A stretch of DNA of 64,000 nucleotides from Squalus acanthias (GCA_030390025.1 CM059430.1:73222001-73286000), one strand, 5' to 3'. Numbered from the stretch's first letter, positions 395 to 62,663 are shown. Notes: generated by a model from the sequence alone, not told the origin. Numbers and translations are program-made.

Positions 395-1831
395 TCACGT
401 TCTGTATCGTGACATGAACCCGATATCGCGATTGAGGCCATCCTCATGAGTGCGGAACTTGGCTATCAGTTTCTGCTCTATGATTTTGCGCTGTCGTGTA
501 TCTCGAAGGCCGCCTTGGAGAACGCTTACCCGCAGATCCGAGGCTGAATGCCCCTGGCTGCTGAAGTGTTCCCCGACTGGGAGGCAACCCTCCTGCCTGG
601 CGATTGTTGCGCGGTGTCCGTTCATACGTTGTCTCAGTGTCTGCATGATCTCGCCGATGTACCATGCTCTGGAGCATCCTTTACTGCAACGTATCAGGTA
701 GACAACGTTGGCCGAGTCACATGAGTATGTACCGTGTACCTGGTGGGTAGTGTCCTCACGTGTAATGATGGTATCTGTGTCCATGATTTGGCATGTCTTG
801 CAGAGGTTGCCGTGGCAGGGTTGTGTGGTGTTTTGTTTGCTGTTCTCCTGAAAGATGGGTAATCTGCTGTGAACGATGGTACTTTTGAGGTTAGGCGGCT
901 GCTTGAAGGCGAGTAGTGGAGGCGTGGGGATGGCCTTAGCAAGGTGTTCGTCGTCATCGATGACATGTTGAAGGCTGCGAAGAACATGGCGTAGTTTTTC
1001 CGTACCGGGGAAGTACTGGACGACGTAGGGTACTCTGTTGGTTGTGTCCCGTGTTCGTCTTCTGAGGAGGTCTATGCGGTTTTTTGCTGTGGCCCGTCGG
1101 AACTGTCGATCGACGAGTCGAGCGTCATATCCCGTTCTTACGAGAGCGTCTTTCAGTGTCCGTAGGTGTCCATCGCGTTCCTCCTCGTCTGAGCAGATCC
1201 TGTGTATTCGCAGGGCTTGTCCATAGGGGATGGCTTCTTTAACGTGGTTAGGGTGGAAGCTGGAGAAGTGGAGCATCGTGAGGTTGTCCGTGGGCTTGCG
1301 GTAGAGTGAAGTGCTGAGGCGTCCGTCTTTGATGGAGATTCGTGTGTCCAAGAATGAAACCGATTCTGAGGAGTAGTCCATGGTGAGTTTGATGGTGGGA
1401 TGGAACCTGTTGATGCTATCGTGCAGTCCTTTCAGTGATCCTTCGCCGTGGGTCCAAAGGAAGAAGATGTCGTCGATGTATCTGGTGTACAGCGTTGGTT
1501 GGAGGTCCTGTGAAGCGAAGAAGTCTTGCTCGAACTTGTGCATGAAGATCTTGGCGTATTGGGGTGCGAATTTGGTCCCCATGGCTGTTCCGTGTGTTTG
1601 GGTGAAAAAATGGTTGTCGAAGGTGAAGACATTGTGGTCAAGGATGAAGCGGATGAGTTGTAAGATGGCGTCCGGAGATTGGCTGTTGTTGGTGTTGAGT
1701 ACTGAGGCTGTCGCAGCGATGCCGTCATTGTGGGGGATATTGGTGTAGAGTGCCGATACGTCCATTGTGACGAGGAGTGTTCCTGGTTCAACTGGTCCAT
1801 GGGTGCTGAGTTTCTGCAAGAAGTCTGTAGT
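395..1831 (-). CDS. Penelope-like RT (C-terminal part) plus GIY-YIG endonuclease, reading frame uninterrupted
   Basis: Motifs LVTMDVSALYTNIP, GTAMGTKFAP, RYIDD, Cys linker PCHGNLCKTC, VVYLIRC...WYIGE, GLN. The first 17 aa of the track ORF (1832-1882) are antisense read-through of the inverted repeat. Confidence 0.93.
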   Translation of the reverse strand, partial: TTDFLQKLSTHGPVEPGTLLVTMDVSALYTNIPHNDGIAATASVLNTNNSQSPDAILQLIRFILDHNVFTFDNHFFTQTHGTAMGTKFAPQYAKIFMHKFEQDFFASQDLQPTLYTRYIDDIFFLWTHGEGSLKGLHDSINRFHPTIKLTMDYSSESVSFLDTRISIKDGRLSTSLYRKPTDNLTMLHFSSFHPNHVKEAIPYGQALRIHRICSDEEERDGHLRTLKDALVRTGYDARLVDRQFRRATAKNRIDLLRRRTRDTTNRVPYVVQYFPGTEKLRHVLRSLQHVIDDDEHLAKAIPTPPLLAFKQPPNLKSTIVHSRLPIFQENSKQNTTQPCHGNLCKTCQIMDTDTIITREDTTHQVHGTYSCDSANVVYLIRCSKGCSRAWYIGEIMQTLRQRMNGHRATIARQEGCLPVGEHFSSQGHSASDLRVSVLQGGLRDTRQRKIIEQKLIAKFRTHEDGLNRDIGFMSRYRT

Positions 1832-2075
1832 GTTCATGTCACGATACAGAACGTGACTTGACATCATGGCCGGTCTTCCCATGTGTTTTTTTTTTTAAAA
1901 GGCTAACACAAGAACACAAATTGACAGGATATGCAGCCAGCAGGTGGTTTGACACGTTGGTCCCCCCTGGGACACATCTCATTGTCTTGACTGTGCTCTT
2001 TGTTGCAGGGAATAATGTGAATAGATTTTGTCTGGGTTTAAATTGTGAATTCTGGGAGATTCTCTCATTGCTAAC

Positions 2076-15856: not shown

Positions 15857-15957
15857 GTAGGAGATGATATTAGGCACACTGCCCCCCCATTCCAAAAATC
15901 TTCATCTATCCAGTTCTCATTCGTAACGGATGATTTGCCGTGTTTTCGTTGCCCGAT

Positions 15958-16012
15958 ATGTTTATGAGTGGAGCAACTTGGGGCCTATGTTTCCTGGACA
16001 TTTTTTATCCAG
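15958..16012 (+). CDS. IgSF receptor exon 1: leader peptide MFMSGATWGLCFLDIFYP
   Basis: ATG, 18 largely hydrophobic codons, phase-1 donor CAG|GTAGAA matching the phase of the V exon. Confidence 0.75.
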
Positions 16013-16348
16013 GTAGAATTTTATCTTTGTTGTTACATATTGACTATTTCCTGAAGAAGAAAGAAATAATGAATTTGATATCTAAGTTAGTGTACAACGC
16101 AAAAGTGTTTCCGCTGGTTTAATTTGATGTATTATTATGATTACATGTGTACCTTGACAGAGGGAAACATCTGGATGAGAAGGGTAATGTTATTTATGAT
16201 AATTCACCAAGAAAACACGTTCAACAACAGGAGAACAATTCTGATAGTTAGATACATTCAATTAATAATATGTCACGATGTTGTTTGTTGGTGCTGATCC
16301 ATTCCATTTTATTAATTATTTAACCGGAGTGGCTTATTTTGTTGATAG

Positions 16349-16660
16349 TTGCTGTGGACACTTCGGGTAAGGTGACTCCGGGCATTGTACAAATGAAAGC
16401 GCTCATAGGTGCAAACCTTACCTTACAATGCCCTTTCCCCTTCCATCAGCACCATTCAAACGTAAACGTTTATTGGTGGAGAGAGGGTAACGATACCATC
16501 CTGCAAGAAGATAGCAGAAAACTGTTTCAAGTAAAGAAAGGCGGCGCCTACCTTCACCTTCTCTATGTGAAGATCCCGGACGCCGGATGGTATCGGTGTG
16601 TAGCCAAGGTTGGGTATCGCCCGGTGGGAAAAAGAACTCGTGTAAAACTTGTTGTATACG
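16349..16660 (+). CDS. IgSF receptor exon 2: V-set domain with germline-joined J-like strand
   Basis: TAG acceptor; LTLQC...VYWWR...AYLHL..VKIPDAGWYRC...VGKRTRVKLVVY; donor G|GTAAGT; phase 1/1. Confidence 0.93.
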
Positions 16661-17270
16661 GTAAGTGTTAGTGGAACTGGAATCGTGGAGAGTTTACTTG
16701 GTGTCGATATTGATACTATACTTAACAAGTAATTTCAATAGGGAATTGCCCTATATATAAAACAGTACAGCGTTCTTCTTGTTTGGAACGACACGTGTTC
16801 AAAAATAAGGAACCGTTTCCAGTTCCAGACTCTTTGAAAAATGTGAAACTGAACTTTATCATCAATTGTGATTTAATTGTATATTTATCAAGTAAAGTGA
16901 ATTCAAGGCTGCGAAATAAAACGTGTCTTTCTAATTTTAGCACTGAGAAGCAGGATGAAAAGTCTTAGGGTTATTTGCAATGTTAAACAAGTTTAAAGGC
17001 CCGATATCTCATTTTGAAAGCAGAGGAGAGGATACCAAACAATCACATCCCTATCATTTAGACGGAACGCTTGCAATTTCTGCTATCTGGAAAAAAATCC
17101 TGAACCGCCGTTCGGTAAAACTGGCGAGATGCACACGATAAACCAAGTGCCGTAGTCCAGACAGAGATTCTAATTTGATCCTTTCCATCCAGAAGAGGAA
17201 AATGTTCTCTATGTATCAATAAAATCCGACTTGCACTATTGCCGTAGTTTAAGCACAACATGCCGATTCG

Positions 17271-18955
17271 AAAACATAGAAACATAGAAAAATAGGAGCA
17301 GGAGTAGCCCATTCAGCCCTTCCAGCCTGCTCCGCCATTCAATATGATCATGGCTGATCCTCTATCCCAATACCATATTCCCCCTCTCTCCCCATACCCC
17401 TTGATGCCTTTTGTGTCTAGAAATCTATCTATCGCCTTCTTAAATATATTCAGTGACTTCGCCGCCACAGCCTTCTGTGGTAGAAAATTCCATTGGTTCA
17501 CCACCCTCTGAGTGAAAATAAATTTTCCTCATTTCAGTCCTAAATGTCCTACCCCGTATCCTGAGTCTGTGACGCATCGTTCTCGACCACCAGCCAAAGG
17601 AAACATCCTCCCTGCATCCAGTCTGTCTAGCCCTGTCAGAATTGTACACGTTTCAATGAGATCCCCTCTCATTCTTCTAAACTCTACTGAATACAGGCAT
17701 GCTCGACCCAATCTCTCCTCATCCGACAGTCCTGCCATCCCAGGAATCAGACTGGTGAACTTTGGCTGCACTCGCTCTGTGGCAAGTATATCCTTTCTTA
17801 GGTAAGGAGACCACAACTGCACACAGTACTCCAGGTGTTGTCTCACTAAGGCCCTGTATAACTGTTGTAAGACTCCCTTGCTCCTGTACTCAAATCCCCT
17901 TGCAATGAAGGCCAACATACCATTTGCCTTTCTAACTGCTTGCTGCACCTGCATGTTTGCGTTCAGTGACTGGTGTACAAGAGCGCCCAGTTCCCTTTGT
18001 ACATCAACATTTCCCAATCTATCAATATTTAACTAATACTCTGCCTTTCTGTTTTTTCTACCGAAGTGGATAACTTCACGTTTATCCACGTTATACTGCA
18101 TCTGCCACGTATTTGCCCACTCACTGAACATGTCTACATCGCCGTGAAGCCTATTTGCATCCTCCTCACAACTCACAATCCCACCTAGTTTCGGGTCGTC
18201 AGCAAACTCGGAAGTATTACATTTGGCTCCCTCATCCAAATCATTGATATATATTTTGAATAGCTGCAGCCGAAGCACTGATCTCTGCGGTACCCCACAA
18301 GTCACCGCCTGCCACCCTGAAAAAGACCCATTTTTTCCTACTCTCTCTTTACTATCTGTTAATCAATTTTCAATCCATGCCAGTATATTACCCCCAATCG
18401 CATGTGCTTTATTTTTGCACACTAACCTCTTATGTGGGACTTTATCAATGGCCTTCTGAAAATCCAAATACACCACATCCACTGGTTCTCCCTTATCTAT
18501 TCCACCAAACATTCCTCAAACAGTTCCAGTAGGTTTTTGTAACATGATTTCCCTTTCATAAATCCATGTTGACTCTATCTATACGAATTGATATTTCTAA
18601 GTGTCCTGTTATCAAATCCTTTTTCATAGACTCTAGCATTTGCCCTGGTGCTGATGCTAGGCTAACCGGTCTGTAGTTCCCTGTTTTCTCTCTCCCTCCT
18701 TTTTTCAATAGTGGTGTTACATTTGCCACCCTCCAATCTGCAGGAACTGTTCCATAATCTATCGAATTTTGGAAGATGACAATCAATGCATCCACTATTT
18801 CCATGGCTACCTCTTTTAGTACTCTGGGATGCAGAATATCAGGCCCTGGGGATTTATCGGCTTTCAGTTCCATTAATTTATACAACACTCTTTTTTTACT
18901 AATACTAATTTCCTTTAATTCCTCCTTCTCACTAGACCCTTGCTTCTCTAGCATT
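17271..18955 (-). mobile_element. HER1-like CR1 LINE in intron 2
   Basis: (AAACATAG)n tail. RT motifs GVPQRSVL, FADD, KANGMLAFIARG, HLEYCVQLWSP. Confidence 0.93.
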
Positions 18956-19237
18956 GGTGGTGACATTGATATTAATAAAAAAAGAGGCCCGATGTTTAAA
19001 ATAATTGTGTTCAATATAACAGTGATACGTCAATACTGTAGGGGAGGAAACTCTGGAAATAATGTCTCTGGATATAGTGAAGAACATGTTAAATTCGGCT
19101 CCAGTCAGGGTCATTAATAACTATCGATACAGCTACTATGCACGAACACAGCTGGTGGTTATTTTTTTTTAAAACAATGAGCAGATAGTATACCTGTCAA
19201 ATGTTTTGCTTTATCTGTTTTTGCTCATTTCATTTAG

Positions 19238-19543
19238 CTGTACCCGCTGCGCTGAATAATGTCCCCATGACATCCGAAGGGGCTTCACCTGCTTTTCTGA
19301 GACACCAGTGCAGATCGGCTGCGTTTTATCCGAAGGACTTCAACCTCACCTGGCAAAAAAACGGTACCGAAATTGCGGCAGGATTTCGAACTGAACAACA
19401 GACAAAGACAGAGTGTCTATATGAAGTTATCAGCTCCTTAGAAGAGAAAACAACAATTGAGCGGGGCACAGTTTATACCTGTAAAGTAAATAACGTTTCA
19501 AACTCAATTCCTGGAAATGCCAGCTACACCTTTGCTAACAAAG
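19238..19543 (+). CDS. IgSF receptor exon 3: C1-set domain
   Basis: TTTCATTTAG acceptor; QCRSAAFYPKDFNLTWQKNG...LYEVISSL...VYTCKVNNVS; donor G|GTAATG; phase 1/1. Confidence 0.93.
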
Positions 19544-20526
19544 GTAATGTTGTAGCACACGTAACATATTTGTCGATCTCTGTGTTTTTCTCGCTATAAT
19601 CGACTTTCCATCGCAGATAATGGGTTAATGCAAGGAAATTCGGGAAGTGTATACTGCAGTTGTTTGCATATCATTCAGTCAGCTCCGAAGTCTGGTTTTA
19701 CTCCAGCTTCCATTGATTGGGTGAAGGTTGTCTTTCTGTTGGCTATTAGGATCTGATCGGAATGAAATTAGACATAAGCAACCTCGCTGACAGTAGACAG
19801 CAGAACTCAGCATAGTTATCATAAATCAGCTAAACAGCCAAAGCATTGGAAATTCACGCAGAGAAGGCACTGTGAGGGTTGTTGCCAGAAATCGCACAAT
19901 GCATTGTAGGACTGGTAAAGTTAGTGAGGACTGGAGGGATGGAGTGGGGGAATTTAGCGTTTACACACTCCCGCAGCCATGAAGCAATCCAATATCAGTC
20001 CCGGCATAATCTAATGCGCAGTGCGACTCCCTGGACACTGTAACAAATAAGAATTGCTTGCCTCCTTCTTCTGGGAAGGTGAGAGTCTTCGTTTTGATTT
20101 GCACCGAAGGGGACCTCCAATAAATTTGTAAACACATTCCATTATAATGTATTTAAACGTTTTTCCTCTATATTGATCAGATAAAACATCCAAAATGATT
20201 TTTCCCACACGTCGCGACCAGATTGATTCTTTTCCCATTGCCCTTTATTCCAGTCAATTAGAAGAGAACCATTTGATGTGTTTTTCTCCATATGTCGCAT
20301 TGCTGCTAATTATCCAAACTACGAGGTGTTTCAAACTCTTCGTTTCTGATTTCATACAAATCAGCTGAATATGGAAATAACAAAATGGACGTGCTGAGCC
20401 TTACTGTACTGTATTATTGTATTCTCAGAGGAGTATATTTGGAAAATATGCTTGTGACATTGAAACGTGTGAATATGCTTTTTACATTCCACAGTTTCTG
20501 ATTTTGAATTGCTATCAATCTCATAG

Positions 20527-20640
20527 ATTTTGACTACACGATCAATATTCTTCTGGTCGCTGTATGTCAAGTGGGTGCGTTGGTAATTTTGCTGTTGATC
20601 ATTCCGATTGTGAAAGGACTCCAATTAGTTACATCTAAAG
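20527..20640 (+). CDS. IgSF receptor exon 4: transmembrane segment
   Basis: DFDYTINILLVAVCQVGALVILLLIIPIVKGLQLVTSK; TAG acceptor, AAG|GTAGGA donor; phase 1/1. Too short for the ORF track. Confidence 0.87.
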
Positions 20641-21163
20641 GTAGGAACCGTTTCGCCTTTGTTGATCATAGTCTTTCTAACAGCAGATTTTAAAACATTT
20701 TAAAATTAGAAATTAATTTTATAATTGATACTGTAACAAATACTTTACTGGCAGGTAGAGAACGAAAGGGCAGATTACAGTCATCATTACAAGCGGAGCA
20801 TCTGAATGGTTCAATATTACTGACGGGTTACTGTAAAAATTCTTCAAACATACATCTCCGTATCTGTTTGCTTGAACTCAAGGTTAGATCATGACGTGAC
20901 TTTAGCAGACTCGTTGCTGGGAATTCCTAAACCATTTTGGTGCAGATGCTGATCTAAAGCAGTAATTTGTTTGTGTATAATGATGCTTGCACAATTTAAT
21001 CACAAGGGACAGAACACAGTTGCAATCGAAGAGCGCTCTTTTTTTAACTCGTGATACTTGTACACCTATTACAACCCGTGAACTAACCTAATTACAGTTG
21101 ATTTAGCTGTTCTGGCGTTCAACTCCGTTCTTGGCGATTAAATTCAATTTTATTTCCCACCAG

Positions 21164-21207
21164 GTGCAAAGAGAAATTCAGTAAATACAAATCAGCATGA
21201 AGATCGG
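21164..21207 (+). CDS. IgSF receptor exon 5: short cytoplasmic exon
   Basis: TTTTATTTCCCACCAG acceptor; GAKRNSVNTNQHEDR; CGG|GTAAGG donor; phase 1/0. Confidence 0.78.
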
Positions 21208-22094
21208 GTAAGGTCATCATATTTTTCCCTCTATTTTCTTTCAAATTTCAACTAAACTATTCAGATATTGCGCTCAAATAAAATGCCCACATGAATCCTT
21301 ACCGCTTGGAGTTATTCATGGTCTTTACCTGTCCTGTGAAACATACATCGCATTCTATGAAGATGGGAAATATAGAATAATGACCGAAGCGTTAAGAAAC
21401 TCTCGCACCGATTTTAATAGACAGTTAAATTATACATTGTAATCCATCTTATAAAAAATGTCATGATATTTGAAAGGACCAATTATAGTATTGAAGAGGT
21501 CGCAGAACGTTGCTCGTTCCTTTTTGCGAACAAGGAAATAGCACGGTGAATTAAAGGTCCAAAATTGATCCTTGTGTATCAAATGGCACCAAGGGACTAT
21601 CAGATCTCCATAGCAGATTTGTACCTGCCTAATAAGTACATTATTGGAAACCTGCTGTTCTACGCAGCTCAAAGCAATTCCACACCGTCGTTGTTGCACG
21701 ATGACCTAACCCGGCATCTCCAGGTGACCGAACCCAAATGCTGTTTTCTGTTCAACCAGTCTGTGGCTATTTTTTTTACAAGCTGGAGACCTCAAATCAC
21801 TATTATATTTACAGGTTGTTTTCGCTCGTAACCCAACAAGCTGTGATGCATGGAAGCTGCAAAAAGTAGTTTTGGTGCAAGAGTACAGATTCCCTTAAGG
21901 ATATTATTGAACCAGTTGGAATTTTACGTTAATCCAAAAGGTGAATGGACACTGCTACTGAAACTAACTATTATATTTTCAGATTTTTAAAACTGAATTC
22001 AAATTTTAAAACTAGCATTTGAACTAATCTGATCAGGATTATTAATCCTGGTCCACGAATAGGGTGATAAGACTTGCAAAAATATCTCTGAAAT

Positions 22095-23326
22095 TATATG
22101 TGTAATTTAACTAGATTTTCAAAAGGCCTTCGACAAGGTAATTCATATTAGACTAATGAATAAGGTCAGATAATGTGGAGTCAGGGGACAATTAGCAGAA
22201 TGGATAACTAGCTGGCTTCGAGATTTAAAGCAGGCAGTAGCCGTAAATGGTAGCTATTCAGTGTGGCAGAAGGTGGGCGTGGTGTTCCACAAGGATCAGT
22301 GCTGGGACCACTATTGTTCACAATTTATATTAACGATTTAGATTTTGAAATCAAAAAGACAATTTGTAAATTTGCAGATGGCACCAAATTGTGGGGGTCG
22401 GGAGAGTGGGGGCGGAGGGACTGTGAGGGGATAGTCAATACTGAAAAGGACTGCAACAAATTGCAGGAAGATATTAATAATCTTGATGAATGCGCATTTA
22501 ATTATCAAATTAAATTCAACAGAGATAATTGTCAGTTATGACATTTTGGTAATAAAAATAGGCAGGTCACAGATTACTTGGAAAACATGAATCTAATTTG
22601 GGTAGAAGAGTAAAGGGATCCATGAGCAAAAATCGTTGAAAGTAGCGACACAGATTAACAAGGCCATAAGAAAGCAAACTAAACACTAAGCTTTATTTCT
22701 AGAGGGATTGAATTGAAAAGTACAGAAATTATGCTAAACTTGCATCGAACCTTAGTTAGAACACAATTCGAATACTGCGTAAAATTCTGATCGCCATATT
22801 ATGAAAAGAATATAGACTCACTGGAGATTGAGCAAACATGATTTACAAGGATGATTCCAGAAAGACGGGGGTATACATATCAGGAAAGGATGAACAGGCG
22901 AGGTCTCTTTTCTCTTGAAATGGGAAGAATGAAGGGTGACCTAATAGAGGTATTTAACATTATGAAAGGTTTTTATAGACTAGATACAGAGAGAGTGTTT
23001 TCACTTGTGGGAAAGAGCAAGACTAGAGGCTATCAATATAAGGTATTCACCAAGAAATCAAATAGGGAATTCAGAAGCAATTGCTTTACCCAGAGAGCGG
23101 TGAGAATATAAAAGTTGCTACCACATGGAGTAGTTGAATCGAAATGTTTAGATGCATTTAAGGGGAGGCTGGATAAGCATATGAGGGAGAAGCGAATAGA
23201 GGGTTATGCTGAAAGATTTAGATGAGGAAAGACGGGTGGAGGCTCGAGTGGGGCATAAACGCCGGAATGGACTGGTTGGGCCGAATGGCCTGTTTCTGTG
23301 CTGCATATCCTGTGTAAACCTATGTA
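22095..23326 (+). mobile_element. CR1 LINE fragment in intron 5
   Basis: GVPQGSVLGPLLFTIYINDL, KGDLIEVFNIMKG, CR1 3' UTR. Confidence 0.9.
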
Positions 23327-23638
23327 ATTTTAGGAAAAATTTGATCTCTTTTTACTTTTTTTCATACAAATATTGGGTTAGCATTAGATATTTGCTCAGC
23401 CCAGGGTCATATGTCTCTCCTCTAAGCGAGCGCTTAATTCCCTTGGACTTCTGAATCAATAACTATTTATACAAGAGGGTCACCAATGCTCCCTATCAAT
23501 AAGACCCGTCCTTTGTGTGCATTGTATGTTGTTATCTGGTGCATGTCCATCTAAGCATTCCTCCTAGCTTCTGGATGCATAGGATTTTGGAAAGTGCAGG
23601 TAAAGTATAGACCAAGCAGCTTTTTCATTTCATATAAC

Positions 23639-24414
23639 GGCCCAGATTTTACGGGGCCAATGACGGCGTACGCACAGCATATGCCATCTTAAGCCCTCAG
23701 AATGGCCCCGCGATTTCCCGGATTCCGCATGCGCCGCGCGTGCATGATAACCCAGAACTTGCAATCTATTAAGCTTCACCTTGACCAATCGTCCACATGT
23801 GCCCCAAAAACACTTTTGCTGGCGCAGATTTGGGCTATATGCCCAACAACTGCCCAGTAAATGCCCACAATACCTTTATGCCTGATAAAAGCATGGGTAA
23901 GGCTTGCTTTTACCAGCGTAAGGATTGAAATAAATGTTAAATTAACATTTAAACAGGATTAAAACATACAAAATATTTAATATTACTTTATTAACATTTT
24001 GTCCTGTATTAAAATGTTTCAATTATTTTTTAAAAAATTTAATTTTCATTTTAAAAGCTTAATTAAAGGGCATTTAAATAATTTTGAACAAGGGAATATT
24101 TATTTGTATTAGAGTTTTGTGAATTATTTTTTTATTTTGTGCTTTCTCGTAAGCTTTTGTGGAATGCGTTCATAAATGGAGTCCCCATAAGCTTATGAGG
24201 AATCCCCCTTTCTAATTGGTTGACTTGGCCCTCGTGATCCGAGGGATGCTTCCAAACCGCCTGCGTCCCTGGGATTCGTGGGACTTTACACAGGCGTCTG
24301 CCTTCAGGCACAGGACCCGAAGACTCCGAAGCCCGGGAGCCAGCAGGTAAATGCTTATTTTTTCGGTTTGGAGGCGTACTCTGGAGGTACGCCTCCGATC
24401 GCAAATGTCGGCCC
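23639..24414. mobile_element. Full-length Harbinger-type MITE
   Basis: Ends GGCCCAGATTTT / GCAAATGTCGGCCC; 3-bp TSD AAC/AAC; inverted homolog of 30093-30869. Confidence 0.85.
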
Positions 24415-24436
24415 AACATGCAGGAATCTGACGATT

Positions 24437-24716
24437 GGACCGGATTTTGCGGTCAGTTGCGAACAAACCGCAAGATCCCTTCGTTACACTTACGCTTGGA
24501 ATGGGTAAGCCATAACTTTTTTTCTGGCGTAAATAACCCAACTAAGTTTCCTCCCTTGGGTCTTTCGGCGAGATATAACACAGCGTCTGTCGGAGCAGGA
24601 CAACTCGGACAGCAACTTTCTGATTAGCCGGTGGCCGATAGTTGCTCTCCGATTTACTTTTTAATAGCGCTGTGTGCTGATAGCATCACCATTTTTTTTA
24701 GCGCAAAATCAGGGCC
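24437..24716. mobile_element. Short (280-bp) Harbinger-type MITE
   Basis: TIRs GGACCGGATTTTGCG / CGCAAAATCAGGGCC; flanks ATT/ATA. Confidence 0.7.
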
Positions 24717-25099
24717 ATAAATGTGTTTAGCACTGCTACAGTTACCAATTTCCCATCCATACTCCTATGTTATAAAATCTTTACACATTGTATGAGCTGA
24801 TGGACAGAAATTTCCTTCCAAATGCGCAACACGGAAGTTAGACCTGAAATGTTTCCATTCCCGGGCTGTACCGCCGTTATTTTTACGATCAAATGTAATG
24901 CCAATCTCATTAGAATATTGAAGACCATAAAATGCGAATACAGCAGCCTAAACAATCGGGGCACACGGACATCACCGATCTCACGTCTTATACTCCTTCT
25001 TCAATATGCGAATTAATGTTCCAAACATTTTCCATGAATATTAGGCAACATGGCTAAGCACCTGCAATGGGTGCACTTCATTTTTTAACGTAATTTATA

Positions 25100-27035
25100 C
25101 CTATACCATATAAATGCAGTAATAGAAACAGAAAACAACGTTCAGGTCTCAGTGAGGATAATTTGGAAAAAAGGTATAATATTACGATGAAACACCATAA
25201 AAAATGATATATTTCCTGGTGTGCCTAAAAATCTGATCGCAATATTCGGAGAACCTCTGAGCAAGCGCAATTGCATGAAAATATTGCATAAGTCTTAATA
25301 ATAGTAGGGCCACTATTATGTTCGGAGATACATTCAGATTTAGGGGTCAATGGACAGCCGTATAGATCGAGGAGAGTTGGGCATATTGTATCAAATACAA
25401 AAATGATATAAAGATATTTAAGATAAAAAAGGGGGATAATTGATAAACTAATCAAACTTAAGAGAGGATAAAAATCCTGGCCCAGATGGATTGCATCCAC
25501 GCATATTATAATAAGTTAGGGCAAATATGGCAGGTGCACTATTACTTATATATAACAATGCATTAGAACAGGGAATACTGCAAGGCGACTGGTGGAGAGC
25601 TAAAGTGATTCCTATATTAAAACATGGAAATAGAATAAGTCCCGTGAATTATAGACCAGTTAGCTTAACGCCGGTGGTAGGTAAGAGAGCCGCATATTTT
25701 CTCAAAGCTATCATAGATAAACATATCGAAATTAAAATATAATAGAGTAGGGTTCAAATGGGAGGATTCTGCAGGATCAAACTTATTGAATATTTGAAGC
25801 AGTAACAGCAAGAGTAGACAAGTGTAATGCAGTCGATATAATATATTTGGAGTTTCAAAAAAACATCGATATTGTATCGCATAGTAAACTCATGATTAAG
25901 ATAAGAGCAAGTGGAGTCAGAGGACAGGCAGCACAATCGATAGCAAGCTGGCTACAAAACAGAAAGCAGAGAGTAGGTTTTAATGGTTGTTACTCAGACT
26001 TGCAAATGGTGGGAAGTGGTGTTCCACAGGGATTGCTGATGGGACAAATGTTGTTCACTATTTACATTAATAATTTTGACTCAGAAATCATAAGTTTAAG
26101 TTTAAATTTGCGGACGACACGACATTGGGAAGTGCAGTTCATACAATGGAAGAATATGACAAAATACAGGAAGATAATAATAAGCTTACAGAATAGGCAT
26201 GTAATTTTCAGATGGAATCCAATTTAGATAACTGTGAGGTGGTACAATTTGTTAGGAACAATAGGTAGTCCACATACAGCTAGGATAATAAAAGACTGAA
26301 TGGAGTAGAGGGGCCAAGTAATCTGGGGATACAAATACACAAATCACTAAAAGTAGCGATACATATTAATCAGGCCACATGAAAACAAACCAAGATTGGG
26401 ATTAATTACTAGACAATAGAATTAAAAAGCAGTGAAGTTATGTTAAACTTGTATCGAACCTTGGTTAGATCACCACACTTGCAGTACTGTGCACAGATCT
26501 GGTCTCCATATTATAAAAATGATATAGAGGCACTGGTGAAAGTGAATAAATGATTCACACGAATGGTACCAGAATTGAGAGGATACACTTATCAGGAAAG
26601 GCAGAACAGGCTGGAGCGCTTTCCTCCAGAAGAAATAATGCTGAGGGATAACCTGGTAGAGGTATTTAAGACAATGAAATGGTTTGCTAGGTTAGACGTA
26701 AATAATATGTTTCCAATTGTGGGGAGTCCAAATATTTGGATCATAAATATAAGATATTCACTAAACAATCCAATAGCAAATTTAGAAGAAACGACTTTAT
26801 CCAAAGAGTAGTAAAAATGTGGAATGTGCTACCACAAGGAGCAGTTGATGCAAATAGCATAGATGCATTAAAGGGGACGCTAGATAAGCACATACGGGGG
26901 AAAGTAATAGAAGGATATGCTGATAGGGTTCGATGATTTAGGGTGGGAGGAGACTCCTGTAGAGCATAAACGCTGACTTCGACCAGTTGGGCGGAATGAC
27001 TTGATTCCGTGCTATACATTCGATAGAACTCGATG
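25100..27035 (+). mobile_element. Old CR1 LINE in intron 5
   Basis: NYRPVSLTPVVG, GSGVPQG, VVKMWNVLPQ, CR1 3' UTR. Confidence 0.88.
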
Positions 27036-27334
27036 GAACGTGTGTAACGCAATAACATCCAAATTTCATCAATTTTTTAAACCGCATAATAGGTTCGTGC
27101 CCAGATTACGCGTGTCTCTGCGCGCAATCTTCTAGCAAATGCAAGGCCTCCCGCTGTAATTTGACAGAAACCAGGAAACAATGGCATAAATCTTGTTTAC
27201 ATATATCTTGCAGCTAATTCATCTCTAAGTTCTTTACTTCTTTATCGCAATCTTACCTCGATCCAGAAGGTCATTTGTTGAAGCCCCACTGCAGCTGCTG
27301 ATCGTATAATGTTGACTGATGTTCACGTGTAGTC

Positions 27335-27578
27335 TCCAGGTAGTGTTGCATTGAACCACGTGCCGTGTTTTAGATGAGACGAAAAATCAAGTCTTCATGT
27401 GCTTGATAAAGTGCACGTAAAAAATCCCACGGCAAGATTTCACAAAGAGCAGTGGAGTTCTTTAGGTAAAGGCGGGTATATGGAGTTAGGTCGCTGATCA
27501 ACCAATATCTCTCTGAATGGCGGAACAGGCTCGAGGGGCTAAATGGCCATCTCCTGGTCCTATGTCCCTATGTACCTG
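27335..27578 (+). mobile_element. Deu-SINE fragment followed by a CR1 tail
   Basis: Similar to 41370-41470; then GAATGGCGGAACAGGCTCGAGGGGCTAAATGGCC. Confidence 0.6.
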
Positions 27579-27971
27579 TGTTCATGTGTTGCAGCCATAA
27601 TTGGTTCTTGAGCCAATACCAACACATGTTACTTATTTCATTGTTATTTGCGCGACCATGCTCTGCACAAATTAGATTCCACATTTGCCTAAATAAAAGC
27701 AGCATCTATGTTATAGAATTAATTAATTTCCTATGGAGCACATTTACATATTCCTCTGCCCATCCCCACTTCGCCGACTCAAAGATTAGCTTGTAGCTGC
27801 CAATCTAAACAATCACCTTCCCATTTTGTTGGGGGCCATATTTATTTACGTGATTATCTACGTAAGATTGATTCTTCACTCTAATTGACTTATTTTTCCG
27901 GATTTTAGTTTCAGCAGGGAAGGAATGGCACTGCCCATAGACTATATGGAGGCTTTTGAGTGGCAAATTAC

Positions 27972-28740
27972 GGACCCTGATTTTGTGTTAAGAATAATGG
28001 TGAAATTATCAGCGCTCACCTTTATTATGGAGTAAATCAGACAGCAAATTCTGGAGTTCGCACATGCACAGTTAAACACGAAAATCTGGCAGTTGCTGTC
28101 CGATTTTCCTTCCCCTGTATCTCACCGATACATTCGGCATTGAAATACAAGTGTGAAGTAGCATTAAAACCCACGAGTTAGCCACGAAACAGAGCAGAAC
28201 ATGTTAGCGGTGTTGCATTCAGGTGTAAGTGATTTTTTTACAACGTGATTCATTGCCAAACAACCTGTCTGGTATTGAACATTTACTTTTACATGGGTGG
28301 AGACTCATTCCTTCAGAAGCTAAACGGCTCGGATCATTCGGCCAGCGGTGGAGGAAAGGCGCACGCCGTTCATCACTCTGATAGCTACCCTCAGACTGTT
28401 TGCGTTCTTTTGAGCAGTAACTTGCTTTAATTAGACGTCTGATCCAACATGGCGCCCCGGATCTCTGTCGTGTGCGAGCTGAGCATACAACAGCGTGGCT
28501 CTTCAACCTATCAGTTTGAAGAATCCTCTCTCAGAAACAGTCAATAAACTAGGAAGTATAAACCAGGAAGTAAGAATTAGATTTAATTCAGTGCAAAATC
28601 ATGTACAGAAAGCGAAATAAATAGAGTGAAAAAATGGTGTTATGAGAGAGATACAAGAGACAGAAAGAAAAACTAAAAACTGACATTGCACTTCTTCTTC
28701 TTTTAAAAATTTGCACTAACTTTCAAAATGTTAAAATTTA
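27972..28740. mobile_element. Decayed MITE (second subfamily); right end uncertain
   Basis: Starts GGACCCTGATTTTGTG; 5' arm homologous to 7219-7440. Confidence 0.5.
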
Positions 28741-28974
28741 TGATTCGTTAGGGTACTAAAGTCTTAGCTTTTTCTAATCCATTGAAGTTTCGATATTGTT
28801 CCCTCGTGAGTTGTTGATTGATGAAAGAAATTGTAAATTAAATTAATGCTCTGCAGAAATAAAAACAAGCCACTGACATTATGCTACTTCAATTGTCTAT
28901 TATATGTAAAGGCTTCGTGACTCTTGAAACTCCAGGAAAAGTAACTCAATGAATGCCAAAGATTGACTTTCTAG

Positions 28975-29058
28975 AAAGAACGAGGAGCAGCTGACGATAA
29001 GCTGACGTACACTGCTCTGGATCTGATCGCTTCCAAGAAAACTGCTCAACCTAAATAA
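28975..29058 (+). CDS. IgSF receptor exon 6: ITIM-bearing tail, ends at TAA
   Basis: TTGACTTTCTAG acceptor, phase 0; KERGAADDKLTYTALDLIASKKTAQPK*; ITIM LTYTAL at 29002-29019. Confidence 0.82.
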   Translation, partial: KERGAADDKLTYTALDLIASKKTAQPK

Positions 29059-29219
29059 CAGGAAGAGAGTAAAATATATACAGAGGTACAAATCAGTTCC
29101 GACATAGAAACAACAATCATGCAAATAAGAATAATTTGGTTGAGATGATATTTAGATTTAACGTGACGTAATTTTCCTTTAGCTTTTAAAAAAATATAAA
29201 ACACTCGTTTGTTCCACAG

Positions 29220-29345
29220 ACCAAACATGGCGCCGTTGATAGCAAACTGACTTACGCTGGTACGAATTTTACTGGTTCCAAGAAAACGTCGGAATCTCAA
29301 AAAAAAAAGAATCAAGTCTTGTATACGCAGCGGTGAAGACCAGCA
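29220..29345 (+). pseudogene. Duplicated second Tyr-motif exon, now downstream of the stop and frameshifted
   Basis: TTTGTTCCACAG acceptor; TKHGAVDSKLTYAGTNFTGSKKTSESQKK, then after an A10 run ESSLVYAAVKT in a shifted frame; aligns with exon 6. Confidence 0.75.
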
Positions 29346-29942
29346 TCTTAATTAGACAAACATGGACATGCTGAAAAGTTTCGGGGGATTTAAAAAAAAT
29401 AAACGTAGCTTGTCCATTTTACTGTGTTGCTGCCCTTTCTCCAGGCCTTGCATATCTTCCCAAGTCCTGGAACGAGTTGTTGCCTTCCACCATTCTTTAT
29501 TGGAAACGCTCCTTTCCGGATTCGAACTCACGCACTGTGTGTCAGTCAAAATCACAACTGGCTTCTTTGCAGCTGTCAAACCTGTTACCATCCCCTGTGA
29601 CCTCGCAATGAAGTTTGACATGTTGAATCAGTAAATTATTCTCCACTGTTTTTGTTGAAGTCTGATTCTGTGCTATTCTTTCTGGTGATTCCGCCTCTGC
29701 CATTGGAAAAAGCGATTTAATCTTCTCTATTTCTCTATTTCCCATTCTCATGTTTACGCGCTTTTGTCCTTCTGATGTTTCTTACTGCTTCAATTGTTCG
29801 AGTTATTCTTTTTGTTTAATGTCTTTAATTTCTTAATGGCTCATTCTATTTCCTGACAGGTGAATATTTATTGCAATATATTACCATTCCAGCAATAGTT
29901 CCTCACTTTCCGCTCCAACCCACTCCCCGTTTACCTGCTTAT

Positions 29943-61689: not shown

Positions 61690-62663
61690 CAGCCTCTGGG
61701 ACATGACTGAACATAGGGCTTCGGGAATCTCAGGCTATCATGTCAGGTCAGGCAAGAGATTTGTAGCTTGCTGGAAGAAGATCTGCTGCCAAGAGGTCCT
61801 AGCGAGCACAGCTTATTAGTGGCTGTCAAAGCCACTACTGCCCTCAACTTCTTCACCTCAGGCTCCTTCGATTCATCTGCAGCAGACATTGCAGAATCTC
61901 ACAGTTGGCAGCACACAAATGCATCACCCAGGTGAACGATGCCATTTTCACAAGTCACGCACTTATGTCCACTTTGCCACTGATGAAGCTAGTCTGACTG
62001 AGCGAGCGCTCGGCAGTTCGGCTCTGGTTGGGTTCCCACAGGAGCAGAGTGTCATCAACTACACACACGTGCCTATCACGGCACCCACAGATTGCCCAGT
62101 AATGTTTGTTAACTGGAAGGACTTCCACTCCCTCAATGTGCCGCCGTCTGCACACTTAAAACGATCATCCTGCGTGTATCAGCAAGATTCCCAGGAGCTG
62201 TCTTTCGTCCTGTTCCAGTCCAACCTCCCTCAGCTCTTGATAACTTCGACCAGACTTAGCAGCTGGCTGCTTGGAGACAAGGGGTCTCCACTGAAGACAT
62301 GGCTGATGAGACCCTTGAGGAGGCCAAGTAATGAGGTCAAAGAGTGCTATGTTCAAAATCACATGACTATCAGGTGTGTAAAAGAGCAAGCAGCCGGGAT
62401 GCTGAAAATGAGCTTTAGATGCCCAGACAGGTCTGGAAGAGCAATTCAATACGCACCAGCCAGGGTCTCCAGACTGATTGGAGCTGCAGGAGGAGCAAAG
62501 CGAAGAGAGTAGAGCCTCTTCAGAGGAGGAGGAGGATGATGAGGTGCAGGTGGAATATGAAGATGAGGAGCAGGAGGATCCTGAGGTGGAGTTGGCAACA
62601 GCAGCGGCGCACATTGTTGCCCGCGAGGCCCAATATGGCAACATAATGGCACGAATTATTTAA
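61690..62663 (+). pseudogene. Harbinger DDE transposase (HARBI1-like), frameshifted
   Basis: VAVKATTALNFFTSGSF, INYTHV, NWKDFHSLNV, LLGDKG, WLMRP, EQAAGMLKMSFRC, acidic C-terminal tail. Confidence 0.88.

What the first reader, a model, noticed from the sequence alone, without database searches (positions are those of the whole stretch)
15958..29058. Non-rearranging VJ-C1 antigen-receptor-like inhibitory receptor hidden among repeats
Seen: six exons (55+312+306+114+44+84 = 915 nt, 304 aa) with GT-AG sites and compatible phases (1,1,1,1,0). They encode a leader, a V domain ending in a J-like strand (GKRTRVKLVV), a C1 domain (FYP..F.LTW.KNG, YTCKV), an uncharged TM and the ITIM LTYTAL. The ORF track shows only the leader, V and C1 pieces as unconnected ORFs. 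Established: C1-set domains are largely restricted to jawed-vertebrate immune molecules (Ig, TCR, MHC, tapasin, SIRP, B7H6), and a germline VJ-C1-TM gene is the architecture proposed for the pre-RAG antigen-receptor ancestor. Inference: this is a shark TCR-chain-shaped receptor that signals through an ITIM rather than CD3, possibly from an uncharacterised NK/myeloid receptor family.
Basis: partly seen in the sequence, partly recalled or inferred. Interest (0 to 1): 0.9.

Follow-up and report, generated by a model that had tools for sequence, protein, structure and literature searches.

The report
Shark SIRP-like V-C1 inhibitory receptor gene
This is a real six-exon gene for a cell-surface immune receptor from a large shark, ray and chimaera family that resembles both antibody light chains and the mammalian brake receptor SIRP-alpha, but this copy has lost most of its signalling tail.

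Summary
All five introns are GT-AG, the phases are 1,1,1,1,0, and the exons sum to 915 nt. Each exon matches, in the same order, predicted V-C1-TM-tail proteins of cartilaginous fish (V exon 64-68% identical, C1 exon 68%).

The gene is therefore not an orphan. It belongs to a multigene family found in chimaeras, sharks and rays. RefSeq names these genes inconsistently: SIRP-alpha-like, SIRP-beta-like, tapasin-related-like, Ig-lambda-like, NCR3LG1-like. The family includes ITIM-tailed members and short-tailed members with a basic residue at the membrane edge.

Among solved structures, the ectodomain is about equally close to SIRP-alpha and to Ig light chains. UrIg2 comes next, and T-cell receptors do not lead.

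the stop codon is premature for the family. A TAA sits where relatives have Q or H. The rest of that exon and a degenerate, frame-shifted seventh exon follow it. This copy keeps one of four tail tyrosine motifs.
- **Other departures:** the J-like strand has lost its second glycine, and the N-terminal domain scores as Ig_3/I-set rather than V-set.
- **Not shown:** no spliced read was seen, so expression is unproven.
- **Earlier scan notes:** unchecked first-stage notes flag the same architecture at many other places in this genome.

The parts
15958..16012 (+). Exon 1: start codon and first part of a split leader (MFMSGATWGLCFLDIFYP), donor GTAGAA, phase 1
   Evidence: It is 69% identical over 16 aa to the N-terminus of P0162 and 56% over 18 aa to P0002. 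An Asp sits where four relatives shown have Gly in the hydrophobic core.
16349..16660 (+). Exon 2: end of the leader plus a V-like Ig domain that runs through its G strand (GKRTRVKLVV) in one exon. Acceptor TGATAG, donor GTAAGT.
   Evidence: Ig_3 1.8e-7, I-set 2.8e-5, V-set 2e-4 (below cut-off); relatives at 7.5e-36; 64-68% identity over 102-103 aa; no RSS heptamer; sits in a 100/100 clade of 14 rows.
19238..19543 (+). Exon 3: C1-set Ig domain (CRSAAFYPKDFNLTWQKNG ... YTCKV)
   Evidence: PF07654 C1-set 3.5e-10, 40.5 bits against a cut-off of 21; best PDB match is UrIg2 at 4.3e-9, then Ig constant domains, an IgNAR C domain and SIRP-alpha; 68% over 100 aa to P0162.
20527..20640 (+). Exon 4: membrane-proximal stalk and uncharged transmembrane helix, with a Cys near its outer end
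   Evidence: It is 55% over 29 aa to P0158 and 52% over 33 aa to P0002. It aligns with the relatives' IAGCAGGAL...IVKGL segment.
21164..21207 (+). Exon 5: short cytoplasmic exon (AKRNSVNTNQHEDR), pyrimidine-rich acceptor, donor GTAAGG, phase 1 to 0
   Evidence: It is 69% over 13 aa to P0002 and 64% over 14 aa to P0158.
28975..29058 (+). Exon 6 as read by the open frame: KERGAADDKLTYTALDLIASKKTAQPK, then TAA at 29056-29058. It carries the only intact ITIM-type motif, LTYTAL.
   Evidence: It is 74% over 27 aa to the tail repeat of P0158/P0005. Relatives have Q or H where the TAA sits.
29059..29085 (+). Untranslated remainder of the family-type exon 6 (QEESKIYTE, in frame after the TAA), followed by a GTACAA donor
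   Evidence: It corresponds to QREESTVYAE of P0158, the family's second tyrosine motif.
29220..29374 (+). Remnant of a seventh, duplicated tail exon. It reads TKHGAVDSKLTYAGTNFTGSKKTSESQKK, shifts frame in an A10 run (29298-29307), then reads ESSLVYAAVKTS... in the +2 frame.
   Evidence: tblastn hit at 29223-29294, E 1.8e-4; 57% over 28 aa to P0158, and LVYAAVK is seen only in the frame that starts at 29222.
29398..29403 (+). First AATAAA after the tail exons; a candidate polyadenylation signal
   Evidence: pattern only; no RNA evidence.
17291..19014 (-). Retrotransposon fragment (reverse-transcriptase remnants) inside intron 2; high-copy repeat
   Evidence: RVT_1 8.7e-4 for 18033-18305(-); summed contig depths of thousands to about 10^5 across 17167-18976 in all 4 runs.
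22263..26936 (+). Retrotransposon fragments inside the 7767-nt intron 5
   Evidence: RVT_1 1.8e-7 for 22263-22541(+) and 2.4e-4 for 25847-26227(+). ORFs are listed.

Best explanation
The locus is an inhibitory-type member of a multigene family of type I membrane receptors in cartilaginous fish. Each member has a split leader, one germline-joined V-like Ig domain with a J-like G strand, one C1-set Ig domain, a transmembrane helix, and a tail built from 37-residue exons that each carry two tyrosine motifs.

The family has two kinds of member. ITIM-tailed members have an uncharged TM. Short-tailed members have an Arg at the outer edge of the TM. That layout is the one seen in paired inhibitory/activating receptors such as SIRP-alpha and SIRP-beta.

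This copy belongs to a V-domain subfamily shared by sharks and rays. Its ectodomain and TM are intact. Its tail is cut short by a TAA inside the first tail exon, which leaves one ITIM (LTYTAL). The next tail exon is degenerate and frame-shifted.

Inferred mechanism, if the gene is expressed: the V-like domain binds an unknown ligand; a Src-family kinase phosphorylates the tyrosine of LTYTAL; an SH2-domain phosphatase (SHP-1/SHP-2 or SHIP) is recruited and damps activating signals. With one tyrosine instead of four, the signal would probably be weaker than in full-tailed relatives.

Shown here: gene structure, domain types, family membership, the tail truncation. Inferred: expression, ligand binding, signalling.
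For: - **Exon model:** the junction codons match those of relatives.
- **V exon:** 212 proteins at E<=0.001 in 1.84 billion. The single-stretch hits of 220-450 aa are V-C1-TM proteins.
- **Taxa:** of 30 clusters looked up, 25 are cartilaginous fish, 3 are tetrapod multi-V proteins and 2 are unnamed. In some searches, 17 of 18 and 23 of 24 listed proteins are cartilaginous fish; the remaining one is a rodent SIRP-alpha.
- **Order of exons:** each exon matches the same relatives colinearly.
- **Domain type and J motif:** C1-set by Pfam. The family consensus is GNGTGxxLxV.
- **Short-tailed members:** P0162, P0164, P0011 and P0165-P0167 have an Arg at the TM edge.
- **Integrity of the ectodomain:** the window departs at 5 of 37 conserved columns. 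Family members, each left out in turn, depart at 1-9 of 37-42.
- **Subfamily:** the V tree places the window in a 100/100 clade of 14 rows with sharks and rays.
- **Tail:** the TAA, the remainder of exon 6 and the frame-shifted exon 7 are shown.
- **Nearest solved structures for the tail-less relative P0162:** SIRP-alpha 6.7e-13, Ig lambda 9.5e-13, SIRP-gamma 5.9e-11, UrIg2 2e-10.
- **Alignment to SIRP-alpha:** the family profile aligns to rodent SIRP-alpha from its third Ig domain through the TM and both ITIM pairs in one stretch of 67.5 bits.
Against: - **No spliced transcript was seen.** The only run with unique matches (X1; that it is RNA is a guess) has one 261-nt contig inside the V exon (7 differences) and one 260-nt contig inside the C1 exon (20 differences), and no joint. 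These could come from a paralogue, a related species or DNA.
- **No product of this gene appeared among the database hits**, so it may be unannotated or treated as a pseudogene.
- **The tail has a premature stop, a broken third motif (LTYAGT) and a frameshift.** This pattern also fits a decaying copy.
- **Other departures:** Asp in the leader core; two Gly-to-Arg changes in the J-like strand; Asn at a C1 column where all 22 relatives have Ile; Asn for the near-invariant His of C..V.H.
- **The tail's likeness to SIRP-alpha may be generic.** A tail-only profile scores SIRP-alpha (four tyrosines) at 30.0 bits and two unrelated reptile ITIM receptors (two tyrosines each) at 16.6 and 9.2 bits.
Confidence: 0.6

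Rival explanations
1. It is a young pseudogene of the same family. After a nonsense change in the first tail exon, the downstream tail decayed. The Ig exons still look intact only because little time has passed.
For: - TAA where relatives have Q or H, a degenerate LTYAGT, and a frameshift in an A10 run of exon 7.
- Asp in the leader core, loss of the second J-motif glycine, Ile to Asn at a column invariant in 22 of 22 relatives, and His to Asn in the C1 hallmark.
- No product of this gene among the database hits.
- No junction-spanning contig.
Against: - The 831 nt of exons 1-5 have no stop or frameshift, and all ten splice sites are canonical.
- Departures at conserved columns (5 of 37) lie inside the family's own range of 1-9.
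- Tail length and the number of tyrosine motifs also vary among predicted relatives, for example P0002, P0163 and P0090.
- The TAA lies about 30 nt before the last candidate exon junction, so by the usual 50-55 nt rule (recalled) the message would escape nonsense-mediated decay.
- The A10 frameshift lies after the stop and could be a homopolymer assembly error.
Confidence: 0.3
2. One reading: a TCR-chain-shaped relic of the pre-RAG antigen receptor that stands apart from described families.
For: - Germline-joined V through the G strand plus a C1 domain plus a TM.
- The family-level J motif is GNGTGxxLxV.
- The family profile aligns to Ig light chains in one stretch across V, J and C.
- The best PDB match of the C1 exon is UrIg2.
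- Unchecked first-stage notes place relatives among Ig light-chain clusters.
Against: - No TCR chain appears in the best 60 PDB matches. SIRP-alpha ties with Ig lambda.
- The TM has no charged residue of the kind TCR chains use to assemble with CD3 (recalled).
- The V-like domain has only 56 residues between its two cysteines and scores as Ig_3/I-set. A V-only profile finds I-set proteins, pIgR D5 and a shark V-NAR first.
- This 64-kb window holds no Ig light-chain gene.
Confidence: 0.1

Closest known systems
SIRP family (SIRP-alpha, -beta, -gamma; PTPNS1)
   Same: - Non-rearranging V-like domain with a J-like strand, followed by C1-set domain(s), a TM and a tail with paired tyrosine motifs.
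- Inhibitory members alongside short-tailed members with a basic TM residue.
- SIRP-alpha is the best PDB match of the tail-less relative P0162 (6.7e-13).
- The family profile aligns colinearly with SIRP-alpha through the C1 domain, TM and tail.
- RefSeq's commonest name for the relatives is SIRP-alpha-like.
   Different: - One C1 domain instead of two.
- The V-like domain is shorter.
- Similarity to Ig light chains is as strong as to SIRP.
- The tail likeness is no greater per motif than with unrelated ITIM receptors.
- Orthology, synteny and CD47 binding were not tested.
- This copy keeps one of the four tyrosine motifs.
UrIg and UrIg2 (non-rearranging shark VJ-C genes; PMC12227049, abstract and section 7 read)
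   Same: - Single-exon VJ-type domain with a split leader and C1-type constant domains, found in cartilaginous fish.
- UrIg2 is the best PDB match of the window's C1 exon (4.3e-9) and a high match of the family profile (3.4e-28).
   Different: - Nurse shark UrIg2 has nine C domains and the epaulette shark model has 11. The paper describes UrIg as also having several C domains.
- The word ITIM does not occur in that paper's main text.
- This gene has one C1 domain and an ITIM tail.
Immunoglobulin light chains (including the germline-joined clusters of cartilaginous fish, recalled)
   Same: V-J-C1 order. Light chains give one-stretch matches across V, J and C to the family profile (about 75 bits) and to P0162 (9.5e-13). 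RefSeq names some relatives 'immunoglobulin lambda-1 light chain-like'.
   Different: This gene has TM and cytoplasmic exons, no RSS, and a short I-set-like V domain. No light-chain gene lies in this window.
[quoted passage not shown] 2019, cited in PMC10751288)
   Same: PMC11599192 and PMC10751288 (passages read) list PRARP among non-rearranging genes with a joined VJ domain.
   Different: Could not be compared. The paper is not held and no PRARP sequence was available. What I recall of its domain make-up comes from no call.
NITR (novel immune-type receptors of bony fish; recalled)
   Same: V domain with a J-like motif, a TM, ITIM or charged-TM variants, and large gene clusters.
   Different: As recalled, NITRs lack a C1-set domain and are known only from bony fish. 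Here the second domain is C1-set.

Membership tests
Cartilaginous-fish V-C1-TM receptor family (unnamed; RefSeq 'SIRP-alpha-like' and other names) | Homology of leader, V-like, C1, TM and tail exons, in the same order | tested here: met
   each exon matches P0002, P0158 or P0162 in order; the exons fit the family alignment; the V exon lies inside a 100/100 clade of 14 family rows.
Ig C1-set domain | Pfam PF07654 above its curated cut-off | tested here: met
   40.5 bits against a cut-off of 21, E 3.5e-10.
Ig V-set domain | Pfam PF07686 above its curated cut-off | tested here: not met
   21.9 bits against a cut-off of 26; Ig_3, ig and I-set score higher. There are 56 residues between the two cysteines. 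Relatives do carry precomputed V-set hits.
Joined VJ domains (antigen-receptor-like) | J consensus FGxGTx(L/V)xV in the G strand (consensus as quoted in PMC11599192) | tested here: inconclusive
   The family consensus is GNGTGxxLxV. This copy reads VGKRTRVKLVV: the first Gly, the Thr and the V/L pattern are kept, but the second Gly is Arg.
Non-rearranging (germline-joined) gene | V through the G strand in one exon, with no recombination signal | tested here: met
   one open exon, 16349-16660; no CACAGTG or CACTGTG between 15900 and 19700.
SIRP family | V-C1-C1 ectodomain | tested here: not met
   Only one C1-like exon exists in the gene and in the whole window. Relatives also have one.
SIRP family | Tail with four tyrosines in two ITIM-type pairs (SIRP-alpha) | tested here: inconclusive
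   Full-tailed relatives meet this feature and align colinearly with SIRP-alpha. This copy stops after the first motif. A control shows that similar per-motif scores arise with unrelated ITIM receptors.
SIRP family | Orthology or synteny with SIRP loci; CD47 binding | not testable with these tools
UrIg / UrIg2 | VJ domain followed by several C domains | tested here: not met
   This gene has one C1 exon only. The UrIg2 architecture is taken from PMC12227049, section 7.
T-cell receptor chain | Charged TM residue for CD3 assembly (recalled), and closest sequence kinship to TCR V and C domains | tested here: not met
   The TM is uncharged. No TCR chain is in the best 60 PDB matches. One TCR scFv appears at 5.9e-11 in the V-only search.
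PRARP | Sequence kinship to the chicken PRARP genes | not testable with these tools
   The paper is not held and no PRARP sequence was returned by any search.
ITIM-bearing inhibitory receptors | (S/I/V/L)xYxx(I/V/L) in the cytoplasmic tail (consensus recalled) | tested here: met
   LTYTAL starts at 29002. Phosphorylation and phosphatase binding were not tested.

The most novel reading that the evidence does not exclude
The family to which this gene belongs may be a surviving non-rearranging VJ-C1 lineage found across cartilaginous fish. On this reading it is as close to Ig light chains as to SIRPs and is interleaved with light-chain clusters, as unchecked first-stage notes on other parts of this genome say. 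It would then be among the nearest living relatives of the gene type that the RAG transposon split, and it would work today as a paired inhibitory/activating innate receptor system.
Probability: 0.15. Interest if true: 0.85.

Novelty: new variant of a known kind. Interest (0 to 1): 0.55.

Why it matters
Non-rearranging genes with a joined VJ domain and a C1 domain are the material from which models of antigen-receptor origin are built. UrIg and UrIg2 were described only in 2023 and 2025.

This family spans chimaeras, sharks and rays, has several V subfamilies, and includes both ITIM-tailed and basic-TM members. It scores about equally against SIRP-alpha and Ig light chains. Properly placed in trees and on chromosomes, it could bear on three questions:
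- whether SIRPs and light chains share a VJ-C1 ancestor;
- how old paired-receptor signalling is;
- what sits among shark light-chain clusters.

This particular copy adds less. It is one member, with a truncated tail and unproven expression. It does show the birth-and-death turnover that is typical of such families.

Tried and rejected
- **C1 exon against the 5.8-billion-protein index.** It found nothing. The tool only sees proteins of 0.55-1.75 times the query length, so this result says nothing about longer relatives.
- **RNA evidence.** The single run search gave no run recorded as RNA. Laying four runs on 15900-21300 gave only two short, low-depth contigs inside the V and C1 exons of run X1 and no joint. 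Everything else lay on the intron-2 repeat. At 90% likeness these contigs could be from a paralogue, another species or DNA, so I do not count them as proof of transcription.
- **Synteny.** This window holds no other Ig-like exon.
- **Reference trees.** Trees with TCR, IgL, SIRP, tapasin, NKp30, B7H6, PRARP and UrIg were not built, because no tool gave me those sequences apart from one rodent SIRP-alpha. I used ranked PDB searches instead.
- **Rejected labels.**
  - TCR-like: see the rival explanations.
  - B7, B7H6 or PD-L1-like: PD-L1 V domains match the V exon only at 2.5e-5, and B7H6 matches P0162 at 2.4e-8, below SIRP and IgL.
  - Tapasin-related: this is an automatic name only, and no tapasin chain is in the best 60 of any PDB search.
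  - UrIg/UrIg2 member: the domain number differs.
- **Literature.** Nine answered searches found no paper in the held library that describes a V-C1-TM-ITIM family in cartilaginous fish. The library lacks most subscription journals. Fu et al. 2019 (PRARP) and Flajnik et al. 2023 (UrIg) are not held. Supplements were not opened. Table S1 and figs S1-S2 of PMC12227049, and supplementary file S9 of PMC10751288 (a Callorhinchus scaffold with the Ig lambda cluster), may list these genes.
- **Joined product.** All searches were exon by exon, and the exon peptides were added to the family alignment as separate rows.

Full report
**The observation**

I read the stretch and scanned it by script. The six exons are there:
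- E1 15958-16012 (55 nt)
- E2 16349-16660 (312 nt)
- E3 19238-19543 (306 nt)
- E4 20527-20640 (114 nt)
- E5 21164-21207 (44 nt)
- E6 28975-29058 (84 nt, TAA at 29056-58)

They sum to 915 nt. Every intron starts GT and ends AG. Intron lengths are 336, 2577, 983, 523 and 7767 nt, and the phases are 1,1,1,1,0.

Introns 2 and 5 carry reverse-transcriptase remnants. The intron-2 piece attracts enormous contig depth in all four runs laid. So 'hidden among repeats' is fair.

**Domain types**

- Pfam calls E3 a C1-set domain, well above its cut-off (40.5 against 21 bits, E 3.5e-10).
- E2 is an Ig domain, but V-set is its fourth-best model and falls below the cut-off (21.9 against 26 bits). Ig_3, ig and I-set score higher.
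- There are only 56 residues between its two cysteines.
- A profile built from V-only relatives finds multi-I-set proteins, pIgR domain 5, a shark V-NAR (7e-12) and one TCR scFv (5.9e-11).
- I therefore call it V-like.
- No recombination-signal heptamer lies between 15900 and 19700. One exon runs through the G strand, so the gene is germline-joined.

**Relatives**

The V exon, scored against 1.84 billion representatives, gave 212 proteins at E<=0.001. The giant multi-Ig proteins in that list are sums of weak I-set matches. The informative hits are single-stretch proteins of about 220-450 aa:
- P0002 and P0004: 64% identity over all 103 residues
- P0005 and P0158: 68%
- P0162: 65%

Their sequences show leader, V-like domain, C1 domain, TM and a tail.

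Every window exon matches them in order. The four split codons give V, A, D and G, the same residues relatives have at those junctions. This supports the splice model without RNA.

**Who has the family and what it is called**

- Of 30 clusters whose names I looked up, 25 are from cartilaginous fish, 3 are tetrapod proteins with several V-like domains and no C1 domain (lizard, turtle, frog), and 2 are unnamed.
- In the two word-indexed searches, 17 of 18 and 23 of 24 listed proteins are from cartilaginous fish. The remaining one is a rodent SIRP-alpha.
- The species include Callorhinchus, nine sharks (for example Heterodontus, Heptranchias, Stegostoma, Scyliorhinus, Cetorhinus, Rhincodon) and rays (Pristis, Hemitrygon, Hypanus, Mobula).
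- RefSeq's names disagree: 'tyrosine-protein phosphatase non-receptor type substrate 1-like', 'signal-regulatory protein beta-1-like', 'tapasin-related protein-like', 'immunoglobulin lambda-1 light chain-like', 'natural cytotoxicity triggering receptor 3 ligand 1-like', or 'uncharacterized'.
- Many members sit on one chromosome-sized record per species. For example, nine clusters lie on one 99.65-Mb Heterodontus record.
- None of the listed proteins is this window's own product.

**Shape of the family**

- An alignment of 22 members has the G-strand consensus GNGTGxxLxV, a J-like motif.
- Some members have tails with repeated units such as LTYAALDL..SKKT.KPKQ.EE.TVYAE.
- Others (P0162, P0164, P0011, P0165-P0167) end soon after a TM that starts with an Arg.
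- That is the layout of paired inhibitory and activating receptors. The pairing with ITAM adaptors is my inference.
- A V-domain tree of 54 rows (none dropped) shows several well-supported subfamilies. It puts the window in a 100/100 clade of 14 rows that holds both sharks and rays, nearest to Heterodontus P0158/P0005 (support 86/59).

In relatives the first tail exon is 37 codons long and ends ...KPKQREESTVYAE. The next exon begins TKH..DSKLTYAAL.

- **Premature stop.** The window reads ...AQPK-TAA-QEESKIYTE, followed by a GTACAA donor at 29086. The stop sits where relatives have Q or H, and the rest of the exon is still recognisable.
- **A seventh exon remnant.** After a good acceptor, an exon copy starts at 29220 (TKHGAVDSKLTYAGT...; 57% over 28 aa to P0158). 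Its ITIM-type motif is broken (LTYAGT).
- **A frameshift.** An A10 run at 29298-29307 shifts the frame, so the family's last motif, LVYAAVK, appears only in the +2 frame.
- **A candidate poly(A) signal.** An AATAAA follows at 29398.

So this copy keeps one of four tyrosine motifs. An earlier first-stage note (s1-889082) had described the duplicated two-tyrosine exon. I confirm the duplication, but not that four motifs are usable.

**Working gene or pseudogene?**

For a working gene:
- Exons 1-5 are open and all splice sites are canonical.
- At the 37 columns that are at least 85% conserved in the family, the window departs at 5 (G114R, P127A, I130N, T149S, H209N). Members left out in turn depart at 1-9 of 37-42.

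Against a working gene:
- I130 is invariant in all 22 relatives.
- The second J-motif glycine and the next one are both Arg.
- The leader core has Asp where four relatives shown have Gly.
- The tail is decayed.

RNA evidence is nearly absent. The run search found no run recorded as RNA. The lay showed only a 261-nt contig at 16347-16607 (7 differences) and a 260-nt contig at 19265-19524 (20 differences) in run X1, with no joints. They fall inside exons, but at 90% likeness a paralogue, a related species or DNA would look the same.

I put a working, short-tailed receptor at about 0.6 and a pseudogene at about 0.3.

**Comparison with known families**

| Query | Best PDB matches |
|---|---|
| C1 exon | UrIg2 4.3e-9; then Ig heavy and light constant domains; an IgNAR C domain 1.9e-7; SIRP-alpha 1.7e-6 |
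| V exon | I-set proteins; PD-L1 V 2.5e-5 |
| Family profile | Ig chains; UrIg2 3.4e-28; SIRP-alpha 3.1e-26; B7-H3; SIRP-gamma (long multi-domain chains gain from summed scores) |
| Tail-less relative P0162 | SIRP-alpha 6.7e-13; Ig lambda 9.5e-13; a kappa chain 4.2e-12; SIRP-gamma 5.9e-11; UrIg2 2e-10 |

No TCR chain is in the best 60.

The family profile aligns to rodent SIRP-alpha in one stretch from its third Ig domain through the TM and both tyrosine pairs (67.5 bits). A tail-only profile scores SIRP-alpha at 30.0 bits, and 0 of 300 shuffles reach that. Two unrelated reptile ITIM receptors, with half as many motifs, score 16.6 and 9.2 bits. The tail likeness may therefore be the common ITIM grammar rather than shared descent.

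My reading is that the gene works like a SIRP-type inhibitory receptor. It is not shown to be a SIRP: it has one C1 domain, not two, and orthology is untested. It is not UrIg or UrIg2, which have many C domains; the UrIg2 paper never mentions ITIM. It is not a TCR chain.

**Literature**

Nine answered searches found no description of such a family in cartilaginous fish in the held library. What I read:
- PMC12227049: abstract, section 7 and found passages.
- PMC10751288: found passages.
- PMC11599192 and PMC5112662: found passages.

Supplements were not opened and may list these genes. The claim 'not in print' is therefore weak.

**Context from the scan**

Unchecked first-stage notes describe paralogues 8 kb and 30 kb upstream and 28 kb downstream of this window. 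They also describe the same VJ-C1-TM-ITIM architecture at eight or more other places in this genome, several 'among Ig light-chain clusters'. I could not test these claims.

**Verdict**

The gene model is real and belongs to a widespread, automatically annotated family that appears uncharacterised in the literature I could search. The TCR-like framing is not. This copy has a truncated tail and unproven expression. The interest lies in the family more than in this member.

Noticed in passing
window 29059-29374: After the TAA, the rest of the family-type tail is still readable: QEESKIYTE, a donor, then a duplicated exon with a broken motif (LTYAGT). An A10 run shifts the frame before LVYAAVK.
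   Followed up: yes
window 17167-18976: The intron-2 retrotransposon fragment draws summed contig depths of thousands to about 10^5 in all four runs laid. It is a very high-copy element in these organisms.
   Followed up: partly
window 395-1882 (-): A 495-codon open frame with a reverse-transcriptase domain (RVT_1 9e-8). A first-stage note places a minimal hammerhead ribozyme nearby at 2076-2114. Together these suggest a Penelope-like element (recalled association, not tested).
   Followed up: partly
window 61889-62512 (+): An open frame with a DDE_Tnp_4 transposase domain (5.1e-7). It looks like a Harbinger/PIF-type DNA transposon remnant; that type name is recalled.
   Followed up: no
proteins P0162, P0164, P0011, P0165-P0167, P0055: Family members with an Arg at the outer edge of the TM. 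Most have short tails.
   Followed up: partly
proteins P0005, P0071, P0104, P0124, P0131: Predicted isoforms or genes that go from the V-like domain straight to the TM, without the C1 domain. The C1 exon seems to be skipped or lost repeatedly in the family.
   Followed up: no
proteins P0097 (lizard) and P0075 (turtle): Reptile proteins with three V-like domains that each end in a J-like GxGT motif, then a TM and an ITIM pair. RefSeq names them 'titin homolog' and 'polymeric immunoglobulin receptor-like'. They may be relatives of the joined-VJ receptor group.
   Followed up: no
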